64,000 nt of DNA from Iphione sp. A-MEVVRFRX5 (lineage: Eukaryota): positions 35,774,001-35,838,000 of the forward strand of contig OZ320315.1 in assembly GCA_976226885.1 (NCBI GenBank), given 5' to 3'. Position numbers and translations under genes: made by a program. How positions within the stretch are numbered: position 1 is the stretch's first letter; each line of letters begins with the position of its first letter. The notes beneath the pieces are model-generated. The model was not told the DNA's origin. It saw only the letters and a list, made by a program, of their open reading frames with translations, and did not search any database. Of this stretch, positions 19,281 through 32,600 are shown piece after piece.

Positions 19281-19721
19281 AGTTGGATGCCTCAATCTGC
19301 GTGTCAAATATCCATGTCACGTTGACCACTTTGTTGACTATGAAGACCATAAACTGACCCATCCGTGGAGGGGGGCTAAAAGACGTCTGCCGCTAGGTAA
19401 TGTACAAAGGTGTCACTGGCACCAGGTATCGCGTGAACATATTTGGCAATGTACCGAGATAGGAAACCACAGACATGGATTTCAACATTGACAGATTGCA
19501 TCATCCTGTGGCCCCTCTCCCATGTGTACATGTATTTTTGTCCCCCGCCTCATAGAGGGGGGGGGACATTAGGAATGCTGCCAGCTGGTGTCCCAACCAT
19601 CCGTCACACTCTTGTGGGTCTTATAAGTCTTAAACCTTTCACTCAAAAAAACTTATTTCAATATATGATATTCACCGATCGCTTCTCGCGAGTTAACCAC
19701 GCCCACCGCGAAACGTCACAG

Positions 19722-19749
19722 ACACGTGCTTCCGGCATAGACAAACAAA
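19722..19749 (+). promoter_or_regulatory. 28-bp subterminal inverted repeat (left), candidate promoter cassette
   Basis: ACACGTGCTTCCGGCATAGACAAACAAA, the exact reverse complement of 29649-29676. Contains an E-box and an ETS-like core, and lies 10 bp before the exonuclease ATG. Confidence 0.55.
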
Positions 19750-19759
19750 CCCATCCAAA

Positions 19760-22700
19760 ATGGCGCTGCATAGGCCGAAGACTGCGTTACTCAGTGATCT
19801 GCCACAGGGTATGAATCCGAAATGGATGCCCCATAAGCCTTCTTCTCGGCAGATAGTCCGCGCGACAGCTTTTGTCACGGGCTGTTTCGTACATGACGTG
19901 TCTCTGACATTTCTGGAGGCAGGAATTGAGGTTTTTGCTCGCTGCTACCGCAGTCAGCGGCGACGGGAGAAGCCCCACGAAGTGCGCCTGGACATAGGTG
20001 ACAGTAAAGTCACATTCTGCCACTGTTCCTGCACAGCTGGGTAAGTGTCACGGTCTTTTATAAATTCTGTGGTATCTATAGATATTGTGCGTTGTATCTG
20101 TAATGTTTTATTCAACTATCACATTCGCATTTTGCGAGCGGAGACTGTACTGTCACCGCCACCATGTGCTGTCAAGCCCACTGCTTCGTAGGTCTGCGCA
20201 CACTTTGCCAAGGTCGAACTGTCACTGTTGCTGATATATACTAGCCATATCTAAGTGTATGAGGCTTCTCTAATAATTTACTGAACTGTCATGTTTGTGT
20301 CACGTTCGTATTTTGCGAGCGGAGGCTGTACTGTCACCGCCGCCATGTGCTGTCAAGCCCACTGCTTCGTAGGTCTGCGCACACTTTGCCAAGGTCGAAC
20401 TGTCACTGTCTCTGATAAATGCTACCCGTATCCAAGTGTATGAGGCTTCTCTAATAAATTTACTGAACTGTCACGTTTGTGTCACGTTCGTATTTTGCGA
20501 GCAGAGGCTGTACTATGGTTAATTATACCGTTTATAGAACCTGTCACCGTCAGTATGTGTTGTTACGTTCATCTGTAGTTATAGAGCCACATGAGATGTA
20601 ACCAGCAGTGTGTCCTCTCCTGTGTTGTCTGCATACCTGTGTTTCACTTTGCCATTTGCTGTCCCTCTTTCATTTAAGGATTGCAGGAAACTGTGCCCAC
20701 ACTCTTGCCGTGGTGCTTGCACTGGCAGAGTGGCAGAAGCTGGGGTTCTCTCAGGCCCCTCAGCCTCTGTCATGCACCTCACTCCCACAGGTTTGGGACA
20801 AACCCCGGTGCAAGAAATCGCTGCCAGAATCTGCAACCGGGGTGTCATTTGCGAAGCCGACCACAAAGGACCGCAAGCGGAAACCACCCACTGCTACTTT
20901 TGTAGACAACAGGTAAGTACAGAACAATGATCCCTTATGTTCAGTGTTAAATTACTTCATTTTCTCATTTCACTGTTTGGAATGTTTCCTTTTCATCTTC
21001 ATGTTATTGTTTTATGGTTCTCATTGACAGTTACTGGTGTTGCAGCTGCGATACAAGGTAAGATATTCTGTGCTATAGAAAAAAATAGAATATTTCTGAT
21101 TATGAAATTCGTATTCTAATTTGATTGCAAAAACAGGAATTCGTCTTTGTACTTTAAGTATTAATTGTTTTCCTTATATTATCCCCAGGACTAAGGCCTC
21201 CAAGCACCTCCGCTTCGATGTCCTGCTGGACATTGAGGGAGGAAGTTCGTACCTCCTCCAGGGGCCTCATGTTGTGGTGGACACCGTTTGTGGTCCTGCT
21301 TACATGGGCAGCATGATGAGCTACCAGGTACGTTTTGGATATGAATAGGTATATGAAATCTGACATAGCATAGGAAATAGTTGTATTTATAAAATGCACT
21401 GTAAGACTCGGATAGAGTTGTTCAGTATTTAATGAAGAAATCTCAGTTTTAATTTTAATGTTACAGTTCCAGGAGTTGACCCCCTCTGTACTTGTCAGGG
21501 ACGCACCTCGGACGTCCTCAAAGTTGAATGTTACAGTTCCAGGAGTTGACCCCCTCTGTACTTGTCAGGGACGCACCTCGGACGTCGTTAATGTTGAATG
21601 TTACGTTTCCAGGAGTTGACCCCCTCTGTACTTGTCACGGACACACCTCGGACGTCCTCAAAGTTGAATGTTACAGTTCCACCAGTTGACACCCTCTGTA
21701 CTTGTCACGGACGCACCTCGGACGTCGTTAATGTTGAATGTTACGTTTCCAGGAGTTGACCCCCTCTGTACTTGTCACGGACACACCTCGGACGTCCTCA
21801 AAGTTGAATGTTACGTTTCCAGGAGTTGACCCCCTCGGTACTTGTCACGGACACACCTCGGACGTCCTCAAAGTTGAATGTTACGTTTCCAGGAGTTGAC
21901 CCCTCTGTACTTGTCACGGATGCACCTCGGACGTCGTTAATGTTGAATGTTACGTTTCCAGGAGTTGACCCCCTCTGTACTTGTCACGGACACACCTCGG
22001 ACGTCCTCAAAGTTGAATGTTACGTTTCCAGGAGTTGACCCCCTCTGTACTTGTCACGGACGCACCTCGGACGTCGTTAATGTTGAATGTTACGTTTCCA
22101 GGAGTTGACCCCCTCTGTACTTGTCACGGACACACCTCGGACGTCCTCAAAGTTGAATGTTACGTTTCCAGGAGTTGACCCCCTCTGTACTTGTCATGGA
22201 CACACCTCGGATGTCCTCAAAGTTGAATGTTACAGTTCCAGGAGTTGACCCCCTCTGTACTTGTCAGGGACGCACCTCGGACGTCCTCAAAGTTGAATGT
22301 TACGTTTCCAGGAGTTGACCCCCTCTGTACTTGTCACGGACACACCTCGGACGTCCTCAAAGTTGAATGTTACGTTTCCAGGAGTTGACCCCCTCTGTAC
22401 TTGTCACGGACACACCTCGGACGTCCTCAAAGTTGAATGTTACGTTTCCAGGAGTTGACCCCCTCTGTACTTGTCACGGACGCACCTCGGACGTCGTTAA
22501 TGTTGAATGTTACGTTTCCAGGAGTTGACCCCCTCTGTACTTGTCACGGACACACCTCGGACGTCCTCAAAGTTGAATGTTACGTTTCCAGGAGTTGACC
22601 CCCTCTGTACTTGTCACGGACACACCTCGGACGTCCTCAAAGTTGAATGTTACAGTTCCAGGAGTTGACCCCCTCTGTACTTGTCACGGACGCACCTCGG

Positions 22701-24843
22701 ATGCACTTGAAACAGGGTCTGGTGGTTCAGGGTCTGGTGGTGTGTCTCTTAGTCTTCCTGGGCTTCCTCACGATCTCTTATCAAGAGTGGCTTGAATGTG
22801 GACAAGTAGGCACAGACAGCCCAGACCTGGTTCACGGTCGCTGTGCCTGACAAGTCCAAGATGTTACTGAGGATTTGCCACTTCTTGATGCGGTTTATGG
22901 CCCTCTCAACATGCACCCGGTGCTTCGCGATGTCCCGTGTCTCGGACACGTCCTGCCCGGTCATCTGAGCACCGGTCCTGGCAAATGGTGGTATGTTGAG
23001 TCGAAGGCCATAATGCCGCAGATCGTCTTCAATGAGGAAGCCCTTATCCACCATCACCCCATCACCCGGCAGGAGATACCCGGACCTCAGCAGCTCCTCT
23101 GCCAGGTCGTAGAAGCCGCTGGCTCTGGTTATTTCCTTGTCGGATATTCCCCCCGTGAACAAGGTGGAGATAAAGATGATAGTACCACGGGGGTCACATC
23201 CGACCAAGGCCTTCCAGGTGTTGCTGGACTTGTAGTCCGAGTATGTCTGGCTCTGCCGGGTCAGGGATGATGGTCGCTGGGTCTTAAACTCGGTCCCGTC
23301 GAGAATCACCATTGTGCGTGGATACTCTGCGCGGAACTTCGGGGGCATGTTGGCAATGATGACGTCGCGGTGGGGGAACAGTGGCAGGCGACTGAAGCGC
23401 TGGTACATATAATTCACCCACCCACCAAACATAAGCGACGCATCCTGTCCTGAGATTCCGTAACGATGCCCCAAGTCCTTGCATTGTAATCCAAGGCGCA
23501 GTCTGCTCAGCACTAGCAGCAGCTGATCCTCAGCAGGTATTGTCACCAGGCATCTCACCTTATGGCTAAAGTGGATGGCGTCATAGACTTTCCCAGTGGG
23601 CACCAGAAACCTGAGCACACTGTTGAAAGTCTGCAACGTCAGTCCAGTGTAGTGGCCAATAAGGTCAGGGATGGGACTCCTGTTGACACTACTTAAGCTC
23701 ATCCTGTGAGCCTGTTGAGATCGAGCCCTGCTGCGCTGTGCTGCTAGCTGGGTTTGCAGACTGGCCTTTGCCCGGGCCATTCTCTCCATTTCAATGGAGA
23801 GTCTGGCAACCTCTGCCTGGGCTGCACGCAGGTCGTCCTTAAGGGCAACATTCTCGACAGTGACCGAGAGAACCTCCAGAGGATCGGCCCCTGTGAAAAG
23901 AGAACAATGTATTAGTCACTGTATGATTATAGTCAGTTATCAAGGGAATAGTCACATGCATCTATAATATAGTGTCAAATTTTCTTTGTAGGCCAAGTAC
24001 ATTGCTGAGTCGCAGGAGAAGACTGGACCCAATGCCCCCCTGGACCCATGTGGAGACATGGTGTTTCCACGGGACTTCGCCCGGGCACCGTGGATTACAC
24101 TACCGCCATGGGATCCAGACATGTGGCTCAGCGTGGCTGTCACCCTTCCACAGGCTGTCCAGCTGGAGCGTGACACCGGTGGGCAGTCTGCGTCTCCGCT
24201 GTGGTGGGAGGAGCGGAGGCGCAGGGTGACAGCCTCACATTTTGCCTCCATTATGAAGAGGAAGGCTGCCGTGTCACCAGCATTCCTACGGAACACATTT
24301 ACCCCCAAGCCCTTCAAGTCGGCGGCCACGCAGTATGGGACCAGCAGTGAAGAGGTGGCCCGGTTGGCTTTCCTGAGGACCCGGGCAGGAAGCCACTACC
24401 ACCATGTGGGGCTGGTGGTGAATCCGGCATTCCCTTTTCTTGCTGCGACTCCTGATGGCCGTCTCTGCACCAATGGCAAGACGGTCATCATGGAGATCAA
24501 GTGCCCATACTCTGCGAGGGACATGACCATCCCAGAGGCTTGCACCACCATCAAGAAGTTCTGCCTGGAACTGAAGGATGGGAAGCCTGTCATGTCCAGG
24601 TCGCATGACTACTGGTTCCAGGTGCAGGGCCAGTTGCTGGTGACAGGTGCAGACTTCTGTACCTTCATAGTGTACACGGCAAGAGACCTCTTCTCAGAGG
24701 ATATAGCCCCCTGCAGCGAGACGATGGCCCAGATGTTGGAAAAGCTGGGTAATTTCTGGCTTACCCATGCAAAGCCATATCTGGGTCAGCTTGCAGCTGA
24801 AGAGGCTGAGGAGGAGGAACTGCAGGGAGGGGAAGAGGTCTAA
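19760..24843 (+). CDS. Transposon SWIM-zinc-finger / YqaJ (lambda-exonuclease-like PD-(D/E)xK) protein, 501 aa
   Basis: Exons 19760-20040, 20679-20912, 21189-21327, 23992-24843 (1,506 nt, phases 2,2,0). SWIM-like CHCSCTAG|IAGNCAH is split by intron 1. YqaJ motifs TGGQSASPLWWEERRRRVTAS, FLAATPDG, MEIKCPY, YWFQVQGQL. Confidence 0.88.
20118..20515. repeat. ~181-bp tandem repeat, ~2.2 copies, in exonuclease intron 1
   Basis: ttttgcgagc recurs at ~20130, 20311 and 20493 with conserved intervening sequence. Confidence 0.9.
21458..22703 (+). repeat. 70-bp minisatellite, ~18 copies
   Basis: Unit ttacgtttccaggagttgaccccctctgtacttgtcacggacacacctcggacgtcctcaaagttgaatg, starting at 21461, 21531, 21601 and so on. 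Two variants alternate irregularly. Confidence 0.97.
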
Positions 24844-27800
24844 TTCTGTCACACTGACACACCTACAACAACCACGGGGGTCAACTGGTGGAACTGTAAC
24901 ATTCAACTCTGAGGACGTCCGAGGTGCGTCCGTGACAATAACAACGGGTGTCAACTGGTGGAACTGTAACATTCAACTTTGAGGACGTCCGAGGTGTGTC
25001 CGTGACAAGTACAGAGGGGGTCAACTCCTGGAAACGTAACATTCAACTTTGAGGACGTCCGAGGTGTGTCCGTGACAAGTACAGAGGGGGTCAACTCCTG
25101 GAAACGTAACATTCAACTGTAAGGACGTCCGAGATCTGTCTCCGACGCAACTGTCTCCTTTATTGTCATTGTGACTATTCCTGGGATTACTTACAATGAC
25201 TTTGTGTCTGGCAGCCCTGACCAATACACTCTGCTACTGCTGGAGGTGCCCCTGCTGCTGCTGAAGGGGCCCTAGCTGCTGCTGCTGAAGGTGCCCCTGC
25301 TGCTGCTGGAGGTGCCCTAGCTGCTGCTGCTGAAGGTGCCCTAGCTGCTGCTGCTGAAGGTGTCCTAGCTGCTGCTGCTGGAGGTGCCCCTGCTGCTGCT
25401 GAAGGTGCCCTAGCTGCTGCTGCTGGAGGTGCCCTTGCTGCTGCTGGAGGTGCCCCTGCTGCTGCTACTGGAGGTGCTGGCCCTTCTACTTGGAAGGTAG
25501 GCTGCCTGTTTCCAATTGATTGTACACATACTAATACTAGTGGGTCTCCACAAGGGTCACTTATGGGAATCATATGGGTTGTCTTGGTTTTTTTTTTATA
25601 AAGACTTAACATCAGTTTAATACCTTATGACATTACTTTTCATCTCAGATGTTACTTTCATTTAGAGAAAAATCAACTGCATATAGGTAGGTAAACTTGA
25701 TAGACTGGCATGGAAAAGAAAAACATTAATTGTCATTAACTTCCAGTAATATTTCTATTCACCTTATGATATTACTTTTCAACCAAAATCTTACTAACAT
25801 TTATATATAAAAACAACAAAGAGGTCTTCTTTCAAATAAAAGCATCTTTTATTCTTGATTAAATATCTTTAATATATATATATAACAAGTGTAAACAGTA
25901 AAAACAAATGTAAAAGAATCAAAATGTCAACAAGTGTAAACAAAAATAACAAGAATAAAAAAAAAAACTGTCTGGGTTAAATAATGTTCAATGTCCTTTT
26001 TAAAAAAATAAAAAATTCTTAGAAGAAGCCCATGAGGGCATCCATTATTGACTTATGCAGGTCATCTGCTGCTGCCGCTACCGCCTCTTCCTGTGGAACT
26101 GCAGGGTGGAGGAGGACCATCAAGTCCTCCTCCAACACCTCCCACACCCCATCTGTATCCTGGTGCAACGTAGGGGTGTGGGAGGCCCCTGGTGTCTCCT
26201 CCTCCTCCTCACTGTCAGAGTCAATCACAATTGGTGGCTCCACTTGCCAGTCTGCCGGTGGCCACTCAATGGCCGGCCACTGCATTTCCACCTGCTGTTG
26301 CTGTTGCTGTTGCTGTGGTAGCTGTGGTGGCTGCTGTTGCTGTTGCTGTGGTAGCTGTGGTGGCTGCTGTTGCTGTTGCTGTTGCTCCTGGAGTGCAGCC
26401 ACCTCCTCCTCCACCAGCACTATTCTCTGCTGAGTGATCCTCAGCTGCTGGTGGAGGAGGGCTAAAAGGGCAGCATCTGCCCCAGCCTCTTGGTGGCGCA
26501 GGAGGATGTATGCTTGCTCTGAAATAGAACAAAGAGTGTGACTGAGTAGTGCATCCCTTATATGTTTCCTGTACATAATCAGATTAGGTCAGGTACTGTT
26601 AGCCTAGGGGTGTCTGTGACATTAACAACAGGGGGGACACCTACTACAAGTGTAACATTCATCAAAAACAACGTGCGGTGTATGTGAGTCATATTTACGA
26701 GAAGGGACACCAGCAACAAGTGTAACATTCCACCTAAAATACGTGGGTGGGGTGTCCGTGACATTAACAACAGGGGGGACACCTACTACAAGTGTAACAT
26801 TCATCAAAAACAACGTGCGGTGTATGTGAGTCATATTTACGAGAAGGGGCACCAGCAACAAGTGTAACATTCCACCTAAAATACATGGGTGGGGTGTCCG
26901 TGACATTAACAACAGGGGGGACACCTACTACAAGTGTAACATTCATCAAAAACAACGTGCGGTGTATGTGAGTCATATTTACGAGAAGGGGCACCAGCAA
27001 CAAGTGTAACATTCCACCTAAAATACGTGGGTGGGGTGTCCGTGACATTAACAACAGGGGGGACACCTACTACAAGTGTAACATTCATCAAAAACAACGT
27101 GCGGTGTATGTGAGTCATATTTACGAGAAGGGGCACCAGCAACAAGTGTAACATTCCACCTAAAATACGTGGGTGGGGTGTCCGTGACATTAACAACAGG
27201 GGGGACACCTACTACAAGTGTAACATTCATCAAAAACAACGTGCGGTGTATGTGAGTCATATTTACGAGAAGGGGCACCAGCAACAAGTGTAACATTCCA
27301 CCTAAAATACGTGGGTGGGGTGTCCGTGACATTAACAACAGGGGGGACACCTACTACAAGTGTAACATTCAGCAAAAACAACGTATGTGTCAGTCACATA
27401 TATCATGAGGGGCATCTAGAATGAGGTTATATTATAAGTCAAACTTACCAGCAGCCTTGCGCCGCGCGCGGCGGAGGCGCTGCTTTGCTGCCTCCAATTG
27501 ATGGTATAATGGCTGCCTCTGCTTGGCAGCCCTCCATTTAGCCGTTCTGACCTTCCCGGGGGTGGGGTTTCCACGAGGCATTTTGCTGTAATGGAAAAGT
27601 CACACAACTGAGAACAGTCTTCAATAGCTGGGTTTTTTTTTTGTTGTTTTTTAAGCTTCTGCACTCACATCTGATGTAGTAGGGTGAGAGGAGTAAGATG
27701 TTCTTTGAATTTTCCAAAACAATACATAAATCAGCCAGTTATGACCAAAAATGTCTCCAACAATTTCATGTCAGTGGCAGTCTAAGCCAAGAAGTGAGCT

Positions 27801-29545
27801 GACCTACATTCAACTTGTTATTTTCATCAAATATTTCAGGATTGAGCTGCTAATGTATGTTAAACTACTGTCCTGTATGTGCTATGTACCTATATGCACA
27901 CTATGACTATGATTCTGGACAGAGAACATCAAAATAGCACAAGATTTTCCCAAAAATTGATGAGTGAAATTAAAAGTTACACTTTCTGCTGAAGGGGCAG
28001 ATCTGGTTCTTTAATCCGGATTCAACCAGCCGTGACCGGAAATCCATTTCCGGTGCAGTTTAAAAAAATGTTCGTAGGTGACAGTGTGGAGCTCAGAAAT
28101 CAGTTACGTATGTCTGAGACGCTTTCCTGTCGCAAAAACCTTCTAAACCGTGACATAAGTAATGATAATATGTTCAGGAATCAACTGTGACAGTTTCACC
28201 AAAAAATGAAAAATCTAAACCCTGGAGCGATTGATTACTTAAGGCTCTCGCACGCTACTGTCAGGGACAGGCTAGGTCAGTCCGCTGGGCAGCTACCCTT
28301 GCCATAGAAAAACACTGCAAACAGACACTTCCAGACATGCAAACGTGACAAAATGTGAGATGAGTACAGAAGACATGTGTAAGAAATGACTGTGACAATT
28401 ACAGGTGGAAAAAAAAATTCTACATGTCTGTGCGAGTAAAAACGTCACGGCCCATACGCAACTGTCAGCATCCACCACCGGGACCGCTGTCACAACCTCC
28501 ACCTCGCCCTCGAAAACCCTCCCGACAAGAGACTTCCAGACATGCAAACGTGACAAAATGTGAGATGAGTACAGAAGACATGTGTAAGAAATGACTGTGA
28601 CAATTACAGGTGGAAAAAAAAATTCTACATGTCTGTGCGAGTAAAAACGTCACGGCCCATACGCAACTGTCCGCACCCACCACCGGGACCGCTGTCACAA
28701 CCTCCACCTCGCCCTCGAAAACCCTCCCGAAAAGAGACTTCCAGACATGCAAACGTGACAAAATGTGAGATGAGTATAGAAGACATGTGTAAGAAATGAC
28801 TGTGACAATTACAGGTGAAAAAAAAAATTCTATATGTCTGTGCGAGTAAAAACGTCACGGCCCATACGCAACTGTCACCGATTCGCTGCAGCTGTGCTCA
28901 AAACGGGACTGATACACACATCTCTACACATGCAGACTTGATGAGACCTGATATAAGTGGAAGAAAAATGGAGAAGATAACTTACTTCGACTTTCTTCTT
29001 CTCTTTGGAGGAGGTGGAGCACTGCGGGGTTTGGGTGCCTTCCTCACCGGCCTCACTCTAGGATTCACTACCCCGGCTGGCAGAGGGTCAGGGTAGTCGT
29101 CTGTTGGGCCATCGCCACCAACAAAATGCTGAAAGAAGACAAACTTTCCATTAAAATTTCATTATCAATTATTATTCTTTTCATTTCAATTATTTTTTCT
29201 ATCACACATATAACTAGCATGACATAGATGACCTTCAAACTGTTAACAATGACAGTACTGACAGCTAGGATATCATGACTCACACAAACTACACAGATAT
29301 CACTTTCATTCAAATTATGTGTTATTAGACTAGACAGACATACTTACCTTGGAACAGACATATCTGTTGGTCTTGATTTTCTTGACGTTGAGTTTCTTGT
29401 GAGGCCGGCCACAGAGCTTGATCCACCTCATGCACTTCTCAAGCTCTGTGCCTGGTTTGGGGAAGGTCACCCAAGATAACCCTGCCATCCTCTCAGGGTA
29501 CCTGCTATCGTTCGTACATCCACCCCACTCGCAGTGTATAACCAT
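22749..29545 (-). CDS. THAP-HTH-DDE transposase (DDE_Tnp_4 / Harbinger-like), 597 aa
   Basis: Exons 29545-29348, 29128-28986, 25505-25195, 23890-22749 (1,794 nt, phases 0,2,1). THAP MVIHCEWGGC...VCSK|HFVGGDGPTDDYPDP, HTH LLLVLSRLRLG...LGHRYGIS, catalytic ILDGTE / VMVDKGF / RVHVERAI. The Ala/Pro exon 3 is inferred from phase compatibility only. Confidence 0.87.
24872..25133 (-). repeat. Same 70-bp minisatellite in inverted orientation, ~3.7 copies
   Basis: attcaac recurs at 24901, 24971, 25041 and 25111. The unit is the reverse complement of the 21458-22703 unit. Confidence 0.95.
25234..25476 (-). repeat. 21-24-bp coding tandem repeat (AAAG/RAP[P/S]) in the putative transposase exon 3
   Basis: Repeated gaaggtgccc(c/t)agctgctgct units that keep the reading frame. 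Confidence 0.85.
26019..27581 (-). CDS. Third transposon gene, unknown 210-aa protein (basic N-terminus, coiled coil, polyQ, acidic SIM-like tail)
   Basis: ATG at 27581. Exon 27581-27449 (donor GTAAGT) plus exon 26518-26019 (acceptor gttctatttcag), both phase 1, 633 nt open. AATAAA downstream near 25850. Confidence 0.65.
26607..27414. repeat. 142-bp tandem repeat, ~5.6 copies, in the intron of the third gene
   Basis: gtccgtgac at 26754, 26896, 27038, 27180 and 27322. The unit is internally a dimer, with GTAACATTC occurring twice. Confidence 0.95.
28325..28878. repeat. ~204-bp tandem repeat, ~2.7 copies, in transposase intron 2
   Basis: acttccagacatgc at 28328, 28532 and 28737. Confidence 0.93.
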
Positions 29546-29648
29546 TTTGGGCTGTGACAAGTACACAAAATTGATAAAAAAGGCGAAAACTGTCTCGGAC
29601 GATGCGTACGCGTGGTGCTGTCAGGACACTGTCACGGACGAGAAGGGC

Positions 29649-29676
29649 TTTGTTTGTCTATGCCGGAAGCACGTGT
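29649..29676 (-). promoter_or_regulatory. 28-bp subterminal inverted repeat (right)
   Basis: TTTGTTTGTCTATGCCGGAAGCACGTGT, about 100 bp upstream of the transposase ATG. Confidence 0.55.
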
Positions 29677-32600
29677 ACCGATTTCGAAACTGGCGCGCCA
29701 AACTAGGTCGCGCGCGCTGATTGGCCGAGACGCCTGTCACTCACGGAAAAGCGATCGGTGAATTGGTATATATGGCCCCATGGCACTGGGTAATTTTGGT
29801 AGTAATTCAAATATTTTGAAGGTGAAATTATACCAATTTTACTCTTTTCCTAACACACCTACAAACATACATACCTGGTTCAGGGGTTCTTAGGTCTGAC
29901 AATGCACATACATATACACTCAGTGCTCAGTCATGCAGAACCGAGGGTTTGTAGCAGTCTGGTGCTCAGTGAGGCAGAACCGAGGGGGCTGTGCCCAGTC
30001 AGGCAGAACCAAGAGTTGTAAACCTGAAGGACTTAAACAAGTCTAGCCAACTACCCTCAAAACAAGCGGCCAATCAAGGTGGTTGTAAGGAGAGAGAGAC
30101 ACTACACACACACACACACTCATTTTCTCTCTCTTTCTCTCCCCCCCCCCCTACATCTTTATGGGCAGTTGATGGCGGGGGGGGGGGGGGACAATAGACC
30201 TCACAGGTCCACACTCTTGTTCACATGGCGACACCCCCTGCTACAAAGAGACAATCTTTGACAGTTGAAGTTAAACCTCAGCGTTGTGAAAGCAGTACAG
30301 TAGACGCCGAGGTCGTGGTCACGCCAGCATACAACACACCTCGCACATACAGCCAGTTGAGCTTGATAAATGCAACTAGCGCCTCCATCCAACGGTCATC
30401 AATGAAAACTTTTTTTATCTACTTTTGTACCACTCAGCAAGAGTTCTTTACCTGTTCCTGGCATCTCACCAAGGCGTGACCCAAGGCGTTGACTCCTGTG
30501 GGCTCAACCAACCCAGGTGCAACTCAAGTCACACATGAGCCTTAAGCCTGCGCTGTACTGTATGAACAACAGTGACCCATCACTGGGAGGCCCGGACATT
30601 GTCCAACGTTTTATTGCATTGTAGCTGCGTTGATTTGGAGGTTAAATATAATGCAGAGGATCGCGTTTATTGCCCACTGATCAATTACATGTATGTCGTT
30701 GATTGCTAGCACTACTATAACCCTAGCACATTTCCCGACTACAAGTCGTAGTCTTTTTATGCTAAGCGATGGGTCAGTCGAGTTCATCTTAATAAGCATC
30801 CAGAGTATGGACCTAGTGTCTGCTTGTTTGCAAGAAATATATGTCGATTATATACCTAACATATGCCTTGACTACTCTTATATAGTCCAAGTATAATATA
30901 GAAGCGAAAATCAGTTTAGAGTAAGTAACTCATCCTGCGGGAAACTCAATTAGGAGAGCAACCGTATATTAAGGACACTTTTTTGGTAGACCCAATACTA
31001 CAAAATATACATGTATAAGTAAACCAACCCTGTGATAAGGGCAAAATTGGATGTTCCCTCCAGTGGTCGCATTAAAGGGTGGCTACTATGATATTCATCA
31101 ATATGTATTACCCTGCACCAATGTGGTGACTTGCGAATCCCGTCAAATAAGCCTGAAACCAAATTTGACTATACTGGTATAACGAGGGGACACTGTACTT
31201 CCCTTACAAATCAGGTAGTTCAGATGTGTCGTTTTGACATATCAGGTAGATATCAAGTCATTCTCTACTAAGTATTTACATGCTTGATGCCTTAAAATAC
31301 GTTACTCAAAAAAAACCCACTAACTGTATTAGCGTCGATCTGCTATTTATACATGTATGATTTCGAGTATAACTATTGTATCTTATCTATGAACTGTTTC
31401 TCTTGCCACTTCCTTGTGATAAAATGTTTGCGGTAACACTCACACTGTGATACACAGACGTTTGCTTACTGTGGTGGTGCTGCATTACCCAGGTAGAGAA
31501 GTACTTAACGGTCTTTTCTGAGTGCTTATTTTTAGCTTGTTAAACATTATCAAAATGACATAAGCTACTATATGGCACTGATACCGCGTAAAGAGTGAAT
31601 GATTCTTGGCTATGAATATTTAACAAAGCTACTGTACTGATTACTAAAGATTGACTTGCCTTTCAGTGTCTGATGTTTGATCGCAAGACTAAACATGAGT
31701 ACACAATATTTTGTTTAATCATTTAACGTGCAATAGTCGGGTCTTCTTTTACTGGCATTATATTGAATATACATGACGCTAATTTAACTGTCATCGATCT
31801 ACAAGTGTGCTTTCATCCTGGTATGGAAATGTACCCTACCACGAAGATTAATCGCGGCAAATGATAACCTGCATGTATTTCAATAAATTATTTCCATATT
31901 CATATTGAGCCTCTTTTATTTCGTTGATGAATCATTATCATTGGAGATCAGCGTACTGGTCTCCAGTATATAAGCAGGGTAAAACGTGCTAGCCACGTCC
32001 CTCTACTGGGTGGTACTCTGGTGGGTTTCCAGTGTAAGGAGGGAGGGGGGGGGCCTCTACTTGGTCTGACCTTAACGTTGCTTTGGAGAGGCCGTGGATG
32101 TGGTTGGTGGGGGTTAAATGACCAGGGCATGCTCTAGGCATAAATAGCAGGAATGTCTGTGTGTGTACTGCCCTGATTTTCACAGTGTAGCTCACAGCTG
32201 CATCTTCCCTTAATACAGAGCTTAAGTATCATCTACAGGGAATTTAATTTTGAAGAAATGTCTACATTGCCATCTCCTTCATACCATGAAAATGTATATC
32301 ATTTCAATCGAATAAGCAATTTTTTCACACGACACTGAAGCAATGCATATTGCTCATATACAAGTCTTGAGGCATCCCAACTTCATCATTTACTTAGTTA
32401 GCTGGTGTGATTACAGCAACATGACGCCTCTTCTACTGTAAAGTTACTGACAATTCTGGTTGCCATACTTTAAGCTTCATAAAAAATAAATTATGGTTGA
32501 GATTCGTATAGAAACAGGGTTACACTCAAGGCTATAAATAAACTTGCCTCTGGCAAAATAGGCTTGTGCTGGCCATGTAAGTGTCTCATTTGTAATGCGA

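What the first reader, a model, noticed from the sequence alone, without database searches (positions are those of the whole stretch)
26019..27581. Third, unrecognised gene inside the transposon: basic helix, zipper, polyQ and SIM-like tail
Seen: a two-exon 210-aa ORF nested in transposase intron 2 on the same strand, with clean splice sites and a downstream AATAAA. It reads MPRGNPTPGKVRTAKWRAAKQRQ...KQRLRRARRKAA (basic), LALLHQQLRITQQRIVLVEEEVAALQ (heptad-like), polyQ/P, then PIVIDSDSEEEEE. Known: ISL2EU elements are described with two proteins, and a hydrophobic core followed by Ser/acidic residues is the phospho-SIM pattern of PML/PIAS. Inference: a transposon-encoded DNA- or chromatin-binding regulator, possibly an anti-silencing factor acting on SUMO-dependent repression. 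Together with the motif-bearing arrays it could form an undescribed three-gene system.
Basis: partly seen in the sequence, partly recalled or inferred. Interest (0 to 1): 0.8.

Follow-up and report, generated by a model that had tools for sequence, protein, structure and literature searches.

The report
Alternative last exon of a transposase
The supposed third gene of this jumping gene is most likely a second ending of the transposase gene itself. It would give a short protein that keeps the DNA-binding head and loses the cutting enzyme, the kind of product that regulates other transposons, but no RNA data or second copy could confirm it.

Summary
The 210-codon spliced reading frame exists as described: ATG at 27581, donor CTG|GTAAGT at 27449, acceptor at 26518, TAA at 26019 and AATAAA at 25853-25848. 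It lies inside an intact ISL2EU transposon with AT target duplications at 19670 and 29763.

It is not a separate nested gene. Its "exon 1" is the transposase's own obligatory exon 3 (27585-27449). Without it, the THAP/NLS exons are out of frame with the HTH-DDE exon. With it, the transposase is an intact 539 aa. The intron phases 0-2-1 are the same as in the four-exon genes of a hemichordate and a bivalve.

The exon 3 donor can join two acceptors in the same phase. The distal one (23890) gives the transposase. The proximal one (26518) gives a 325-aa protein with THAP, NLS, basic helix, heptad helix, polyQ/P and an acidic SIM-like tail, ending at its own polyA signal.

The 165-codon alternative exon:
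- has coding-like codon usage in the proposed frame only;
- is rare in shuffled sequence (about 1% or less);
- has no relatives in any database;
- is absent from six related elements.

The best reading is a P-element- or En/Spm-style non-catalytic DNA-binding isoform. Expression is unverified because no runs were listed. The scan noted a sister element (s1-334877) elsewhere in this genome.

The parts
19670..19684 (+). Left end of the ISL2EU element: AT target-site duplication (19670-19671) followed by the terminal inverted repeat. A 28-nt subterminal repeat lies at 19722-19749.
29749..29763 (-). Right end: terminal inverted repeat followed by the AT target-site duplication (29762-29763). The 28-nt subterminal repeat lies at 29649-29676.
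29348..29545 (-). Transposase exon 1: THAP zinc finger (66 aa). The donor is AAG|GTAAGT, phase 0.
28986..29128 (-). Transposase exon 2: linker with the conserved YPDPLPA and the PPPKRRRK nuclear localisation signal. The donor is GAA|GTAAGT, phase 2.
27449..27585 (-). It encodes a basic helix, has the acceptor CCATTACAG|C and a donor of phase 1. It is needed to keep the transposase in frame.
26607..27384 (-). 142-bp x5.5 tandem array (99% identical) between the exon 3 donor and the proximal acceptor. It carries TGTCACGGACAC and GAATGTTACA motifs.
26019..26518 (-). Its phase-1 acceptor is followed by 165 codons and TAA. It encodes a long helix with four heptads, polyQ/P, the acidic PIVIDSDSEEEEE and two weak C-terminal helices.
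25848..25853 (-). AATAAA polyadenylation signal 166 nt after the stop codon. An ATTAAA also lies at 25873-25868.
22749..23890 (-). Transposase exon 4: coiled coil, HTH_Tnp_4 and DDE_Tnp_4. This is the distal phase-1 acceptor that competes with 26518.
24058..24843 (+). Last exon of the YqaJ exonuclease gene. It lies on the opposite strand inside the same transposase intron 3.

Best explanation
The finding is an alternative 3'-terminal exon of the ISL2EU transposase gene, not a third gene.

One transcription unit starts at the THAP exon, and exons 1-3 are common to both products. After exon 3 the donor at 27449 has two choices. It can join the distal acceptor at 23890, which gives the 539-aa THAP-HTH-DDE transposase. 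Or it can join the proximal acceptor at 26518, after which the transcript ends at the AATAAA at 25853. That gives a 325-aa protein which keeps the THAP DNA-binding domain, the NLS and the basic helix. In place of the HTH/DDE catalytic part it carries a heptad (dimerising) helix, a polyQ/P stretch and an acidic, SIM-like, activation-domain-like tail.

Such a protein would occupy the same DNA motifs as the transposase, probably the mirror-oriented TGTCACGGACAC/GAATGTTACA arrays and the subterminal sites, without cutting. It would so tune transposition or the element's transcription. Choosing the proximal acceptor and polyA site would by itself lower transposase output.

Shown: exon sharing, frame compatibility of both acceptors, coding-like statistics and lineage restriction. 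Inferred: that the splice is used, that the protein binds the arrays, and the direction of its effect.
For: - Exons 1+2+4 are out of frame, with a stop after 16 codons. Exons 1+2+3+4 give an intact 539 aa.
- The four-exon structure with intron phases 0-2-1 is identical in the Glandiceps and Dreissena genes. Exon 3 sits in the variable linker of the alignment.
- Acceptors 26518 and 23890 are both phase 1 with pyrimidine tracts of 16/20 and 15/20. They are the two longest in-phase frames in the intron.
- Joining exons 1-3 to the alternative exon gives an uninterrupted 325 aa.
- Codon-usage log-likelihood is 0.32-0.44 bit per codon in the proposed frame. That is the best of six frames and above real exons (0.17-0.18); intron controls are negative.
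- The frame occurs in 10/1000 and 2/1000 shuffles.
- AATAAA lies 166 nt after the stop.
- AlphaFold gives a helix over residues 2-49 of the exon with pLDDT up to 89. The heptad a/d positions read L,L,L,T,I,V,V,L.
- Motif arrays are enriched and mirror-oriented within the element.
- Precedent: the P element makes a 66-kDa THAP-bearing repressor by alternative splicing (PMC7776569).
Against: - There is no RNA evidence: no sequencing run was listed.
- Only one copy could be examined, and the element is young, so an intact frame is weak evidence of selection.
- The exon is low-complexity. A 33-nt perfect in-frame duplication and a (GAG)5 run are present, and other frames of the region are also partly open.
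- No homologue turned up in Pfam, the word search, 1.84 billion representatives, metagenomes, the Atlas or the PDB.
- Six related elements have no equivalent exon.
- Frame agreement between the two acceptors has a 1 in 3 chance.
Confidence: 0.55

Rival explanations
1. Fortuitous frame. The 500-nt stretch is young, GC- and CAG-rich intronic filler between repeat arrays. It happens to be open behind an acceptor-like site and makes no functional protein.
For: The sequence is low-complexity and microsatellite-derived, and several other frames in 26032-26532 are open for 81-133 codons. The protein is an orphan with no relative anywhere. The language-model recognition score is low. The 142-bp array units next to it also give in-phase 83-codon frames. 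Related elements lack the exon.
Against: Codon usage is coding-like in this frame only, including in the two non-repetitive parts. The frame length is reached in 1% or fewer of shuffles. A strong acceptor in the right phase and a polyA signal at a normal distance are also present. A confident long helix is predicted.
Confidence: 0.25
2. Independent third gene. An internal promoter in transposase intron 2 drives a transcript that starts translation at ATG 27581 and yields the 210-aa protein without a THAP domain.
For: The ATG has A at -3, and no upstream ATG lies within about 60 nt. The 210-aa frame is complete.
Against: The ATG sits 4 nt inside an exon that the transposase needs. The sequence just upstream is a splice acceptor. 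No TATA-like element is seen in 27586-27800. This reading requires an extra promoter, whereas the alternative-exon reading requires none.
Confidence: 0.12
3. Cassette exon. An internal donor ACA|GTGAGG at 26213/26212 would make a 306-nt in-phase exon. It would insert the coiled-coil/polyQ segment into a longer transposase.
For: It is the only GTRAG donor inside the exon, and its exon length is a multiple of 3.
Against: The exonic side of the donor is weak. The insertion would fall within the linker before the conserved coiled coil, where no relative has such a segment. It leaves the open acidic tail and the polyA signal unexplained.
Confidence: 0.03
4. Captured host gene fragment (transduplication) carried as passive cargo.
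For: The exon is restricted to this element lineage. The element is about twice the size of its relatives.
Against: No protein in 1.84 billion representatives or 5.8 billion clusters resembles it, and no similar DNA occurs elsewhere in the window. A host gene specific to this lineage cannot be excluded, because the host genome is not in the collections.
Confidence: 0.05

Closest known systems
Drosophila P element 66-kDa repressor and KP protein (PMC7776569)
   Same: These are truncated products of the transposase gene. [quoted passage not shown] The 66-kDa form arises by an alternative splicing decision at the last intron, and both act as DNA-binding repressors.
   Different: P transposase is a different superfamily (RNase H fold with a GTP-binding insertion), whereas this is a PHIS/ISL2EU DDE_Tnp_4 enzyme. 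In P the short form arises by intron retention. Here it would arise from a dedicated alternative terminal exon with its own polyA signal, which encodes a 165-aa tail absent from the transposase. Repression is not shown here.
En/Spm (CACTA) TnpA and TnpD (own knowledge)
   Same: One transcription unit gives two proteins by alternative splicing. The non-catalytic one binds short motifs that are repeated many times in direct and inverted orientation in the subterminal regions, and it regulates the element's promoter and silencing state.
   Different: There is no sequence relationship. En/Spm is a plant CACTA element, and TnpA shares only a short leader with TnpD rather than a DNA-binding domain. 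Binding of the arrays is only inferred here.
Canonical ISL2EU elements (PMC4482050, PMC9179366)
   Same: A THAP-HTH-DDE transposase, a YqaJ exonuclease gene, an AT target duplication and short TIRs. The transposase and YqaJ genes are interleaved on opposite strands, as in the Dreissena locus.
   Different: Canonical elements are described with two ORFs only. This element is about 10 kb, has a 3.6-kb last transposase intron with an extra coding exon, and carries large motif arrays.
Phospho-SIMs of PIAS, PML and Daxx (own knowledge)
   Same: A short hydrophobic core is followed directly by Ser/Asp/Glu with CK2-type sites (PIVIDSDSEEEEE).
   Different: Only a relaxed pattern matches, and there are three rather than the canonical four core positions. 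The acidic run derives from a (GAG)5 repeat. SUMO binding is untested.

Membership tests
ISL2EU (PHIS superfamily) DNA transposon | Transposase with DDE_Tnp_4, HTH_Tnp_4 and THAP domains | tested here: met
   Pfam: DDE_Tnp_4 at 5e-42 and HTH_Tnp_4 at 4e-11. THAP scores 23.0 bits on exon 1 alone against a cut-off of 23.9. The THAP region aligns with relatives whose THAP domain is annotated.
ISL2EU (PHIS superfamily) DNA transposon | Second gene encoding a YqaJ-type exonuclease | tested here: met
   The ORF at 24058-24843 (+) matches YqaJ at 6.6e-14.
ISL2EU (PHIS superfamily) DNA transposon | Short TIRs and a 2-bp AT target-site duplication (target A|AT|T) | tested here: met
   TIRs at 19670-19684 and 29749-29763, with AT on both sides of TCACCG...CGGTGA. 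The criterion comes from PMC4482050.
Truncated DNA-binding transposase isoform (P-element 66-kDa/KP type regulator; a functional class, not a homology family) | Shares the N-terminal DNA-binding domain with the transposase and lacks the catalytic domain | tested here: met
   Exons 1-3 plus the alternative exon read through in frame to 325 aa, with THAP and NLS and without HTH/DDE. This holds for the predicted mRNA only.
Truncated DNA-binding transposase isoform (P-element 66-kDa/KP type regulator; a functional class, not a homology family) | Produced from the transposase transcription unit by alternative RNA processing | not testable with these tools
   No sequencing run was listed for this DNA. 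The splice sites, phases and polyA signal are compatible.
Truncated DNA-binding transposase isoform (P-element 66-kDa/KP type regulator; a functional class, not a homology family) | Dimerisation segment next to the DNA-binding domain | tested here: inconclusive
   Four heptads have L/I/V at 7 of 8 a/d positions, and a helix is predicted. No coiled-coil predictor or experiment was available.
Truncated DNA-binding transposase isoform (P-element 66-kDa/KP type regulator; a functional class, not a homology family) | Inhibits transposition | not testable with these tools
   This needs a transposition assay.
Phospho-regulated SUMO-interaction motif | Hydrophobic core (psi-psi-x-psi or psi-x-psi-psi) flanked by acidic or phosphorylatable residues | tested here: inconclusive
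   The strict core regex does not hit PIVID. A relaxed ELM-type regex, recalled from memory, hits EPPIVIDSDSEEEEET. The strict phospho-SIM-like form occurs in 1 of 5000 shuffles and in 0 of 120 control proteins.
Phospho-regulated SUMO-interaction motif | Binds SUMO | not testable with these tools
   This needs a pull-down or NMR experiment.
bZIP transcription factors (considered for 'basic helix + zipper') | Match to the bZIP basic-region/leucine-zipper profile | tested here: not met
   Neither exon product gave a bZIP hit at E up to 1. The junction between the two exons could not be scanned as one piece.

The most novel reading that the evidence does not exclude
An active ISL2EU transposon of an invertebrate has evolved, de novo in its last intron, a dedicated alternative terminal exon. 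The exon turns its THAP transposase into a dimeric, array-binding transcription-factor-like regulator. The acidic SIM-like tail of that regulator engages the host's SUMO-dependent silencing machinery, in a TnpA-like anti-silencing or self-taming role. This would be a third protein from a 'two-gene' superfamily, produced by a new route.
Probability: 0.1. Interest if true: 0.75.

Novelty: new variant of a known kind. Interest (0 to 1): 0.45.

Why it matters
ISL2EU elements are described as two-protein transposons, and nothing is known about how they are regulated. A transposase gene that can end either in its catalytic exon or in a lineage-specific exon would be an independent reinvention of the P-element and En/Spm strategy in another superfamily. 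The short form would keep the THAP head and add a dimerising, Q-rich, acidic tail. This would also be a case of de novo exon birth inside a transposon. It gives a concrete hypothesis, testable by RT-PCR, for the large motif arrays of the element. It also corrects the gene model: a three-exon transposase model would be frameshifted.

Tried and rejected
- RNA evidence: two run searches listed nothing, so read laying could not be used.
- Homologues of the alternative exon product were sought in six places and none was found. These were Pfam, the word-indexed 5.8-billion-cluster search, the ESM Atlas, the exhaustive search of 1.84 billion representatives, a metagenome back-translation scan and PDB sequences.
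- Sister copies: no other fragment of the element lies in the window. The 28-nt subterminal repeat has no exact match in metagenome contigs. The closest transposases in the collections are only about 50% identical.
- Origin by duplication of the start of the DDE exon is rejected. Protein and DNA alignments score no better than shuffles, which reached the observed score in 1336/2000 and 140/500 trials.
- My own first phase count was wrong. I first took the DDE acceptor as phase 2, and translation corrected this.
Only the exon pieces were searched.
- I ran no further search on identifying the host.

Full report
**Observation**

An ATG at 27581 is followed by 44 codons and the donor CTG|GTAAGT after 27449. 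A 930-nt intron is almost filled by a 142-bp x5.5 tandem array (26607-27384, 99% identical). The acceptor TTCTATTTCAG|AG lies before 26518 and is followed by 165 codons, TAA at 26021-26019 and AATAAA at 25853-25848. The translation is 210 aa with four parts:
- a very basic N-terminal third (pI 11.7);
- a heptad-like helix;
- a polyQ/P stretch made by a perfect 33-nt in-frame duplication;
- an acidic C-terminal part (21 D+E in 88 residues) that includes PIVIDSDSEEEEE.

**Setting**

The frame lies inside an intact ISL2EU element.
- Terminal inverted repeats sit at 19670-19684 and 29749-29763, with AT on both sides. A 28-nt subterminal inverted repeat is also present.
- The AT duplication is the target-site signature given for ISL2EU in PMC4482050.
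- Pfam finds DDE_Tnp_4 and HTH_Tnp_4 in the ORF at 22749-23789 (-), YqaJ in 24058-24843 (+) and THAP in 29330-29566 (-).
- Both papers that survey the group describe two ORFs only, a transposase and a YqaJ protein.

**The gene model has to be changed**

Transposase exon 1 (THAP, 29545-29348) and exon 2 (linker and KRRRK signal, 29128-28986) end in phase 2. The HTH-DDE exon (from 23890) begins in phase 1. Joined directly they are out of frame, and a stop follows after 16 codons.

With that exon the transposase is an uninterrupted 539 aa.

The annotated genes of the two closest THAP-bearing relatives are from Glandiceps talaboti and Dreissena polymorpha (49% and 47% identity over the full-length alignment). 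Both have four exons with intron phases 0, 2, 1, the same as here. In a ten-protein alignment, exon 3 falls in the variable linker between the nuclear localisation signal and the conserved start of the last exon.

**What remains of the finding**

What remains is the 500-nt exon 26518-26019, which lies in the last transposase intron (27448-23891, 3558 nt). Its acceptor has the same phase as the DDE exon's acceptor, so the exon 3 donor can join either in frame.
- The distal choice (23890) gives the transposase.
- The proximal choice (26518) gives a 325-aa protein made of THAP, NLS, basic helix, heptad helix, polyQ/P and an acidic tail. It ends at its own polyA signal.

These two acceptors head the two longest in-phase frames behind pyrimidine-rich acceptors in the intron.

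**Is the exon coding?**

Evidence for:
- A codon-usage log-likelihood was trained on 4088 codons from other genes in the window. In the proposed frame it scores 0.38 bit per codon for the whole exon, 0.44 for the non-repetitive N part and 0.32 for the non-repetitive C part. This is the best of the six frames in each case.
- Real exons score 0.17-0.18, and intron controls are negative.
- An in-phase frame of at least 165 codons appears in 10 of 1000 dinucleotide shuffles of the intron and in 2 of 1000 local shuffles.
- Elsewhere in the window, nearly all ORFs of 140 aa or more lie in long ORFs that I take to be genes or other mobile elements, or overlap them.
- AlphaFold, without an alignment, predicts one long helix over residues 2-49 of the exon with pLDDT up to 89. 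The middle is disordered and two C-terminal helices are weak.
- The helix has four heptads with L,L,L,T,I,V,V,L at the a/d positions.

Evidence against:
- The sequence is partly microsatellite-derived, and other frames there are open for 81-133 codons.
- The element is young, so intactness says little about selection.

**Relatives**

None was found for the exon product.
- Pfam gave only sub-threshold low-complexity matches.
- The word-indexed search was blank and the ESM Atlas gave no usable hit.
- The exhaustive HMMER search of 1.84 billion representatives gave no hit at E up to 0.001.
- The metagenome scan was blank and nothing in the PDB scored below E 0.27.
- Six related elements were examined, from a hemichordate, four bivalves and a fish. 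Their transposase genes span 2.3-4.6 kb, against 6.8 kb here. They have no protein-like frame between the THAP and DDE exons and no in-phase alternative exon.

The exon is therefore specific to this lineage. It is not a conserved ISL2EU component, and it is not a recognisable captured gene.

The scan's index lists a sister element of about 10.2 kb some 942 kb beyond this window, noted as having "extra spliced genes nested in the transposase's last intron" (s1-334877). I could not read that DNA.

**Mechanism**

*Shown:* exons 1-3 are shared, both endings are in frame, and the short form lacks the HTH and DDE domains.

*Inferred:* the short form is made by choice of the proximal acceptor and polyA site. 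It then enters the nucleus through the exon 2 signal, binds the same sites as the transposase through THAP, and dimerises through the heptad helix.

The likely targets are the motifs TGTCACGGACAC and GAATGTTACA.
- With mismatches allowed, each occurs 42 times in the window, against about 5 and 6 expected by chance. About 33 matches of each lie inside the element.
- They form a 70-bp x17.8 array on the plus strand in the left half. In the right half, a 70-bp x3.9 array and the 142-bp x5.5 array are on the minus strand.
- Single copies lie next to both subterminal repeats.

The closest precedents are the P element 66-kDa and KP repressors, which are THAP plus leucine zipper without the catalytic part (PMC7776569). 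From my own knowledge, En/Spm TnpA is a second precedent: it is an alternatively spliced product that binds subterminal repeat motifs and controls the element's promoter.

The Q-rich and acidic-hydrophobic tail looks like an activation domain, so the direction of the effect (repression, activation or anti-silencing) is open. Independently of the protein, use of the proximal site would reduce transposase mRNA.

**The SIM claim**

PIVIDSDSEEEEE matches a relaxed ELM-type SIM pattern that I recalled from memory. A stricter "core plus at least five D/E/S" form occurs in 1 of 5000 shuffles of the protein and in none of 120 control proteins. Two CK2-type sites lie within the motif.

The strict four-position core does not match, and the glutamate run comes from (GAG)5. 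This is a lead, not a result.

**Verdict**

The best reading is two genes and three proteins, through an alternative last exon of the transposase gene. This is a new variant of a known regulatory principle in a superfamily where it has not been described. It rests on one copy and has no expression data.

Noticed in passing
window 21457-22701 (+), 24865-25140 (-), 26607-27384 (-); also 20119-20514 and 28323-28877: Tandem arrays of 70-bp and 142-bp units share the motifs TGTCACGGACAC and GAATGTTACA. The arrays are mirror-oriented, on the plus strand in the left half of the element and on the minus strand in the right half. The TGTCAC core shows the same polarity in the 181-bp and 205-bp repeats. 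This looks like an expanded set of transposase-binding sites.
   Followed up: partly
window 25187-25612 (-): A 141-aa Ala/Pro-rich ORF is built from 24/45-nt repeats, downstream of the alternative exon's polyA signal. It has no Pfam match and is not in phase with the exon 3 donor behind any good acceptor. It is probably a repeat artefact.
   Followed up: partly
window 26212-26213 (-): ACA|GTGAGG is the only GTRAG donor inside the alternative exon. It would make a 306-nt exon that keeps the phase into the DDE exon, so a cassette form that inserts the coiled-coil/polyQ segment into the transposase is formally possible.
   Followed up: no
L002 10001-16307 (Dreissena polymorpha) compared with window 22749-24843: In the Dreissena locus the last YqaJ exon lies on the opposite strand inside the transposase's last intron, and the DDE exon lies inside a YqaJ intron. 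The window shows the same layout as far as it was examined: its last YqaJ exon lies inside transposase intron 3 (upstream YqaJ exons were not mapped). The interleaving therefore appears to be ancestral and not special to this copy.
   Followed up: partly
L001 and L002 compared with window 22749-29545: The intron phases of the transposase gene (0, 2, 1) are conserved between a hemichordate, a bivalve and this element, although exon 3 shows no sequence similarity.
   Followed up: yes
window 26299-26382: A perfect 33-nt x2.5 in-frame duplication creates the QQQQQQPPQLP repeats, which points to very recent expansion inside the alternative exon.
   Followed up: no
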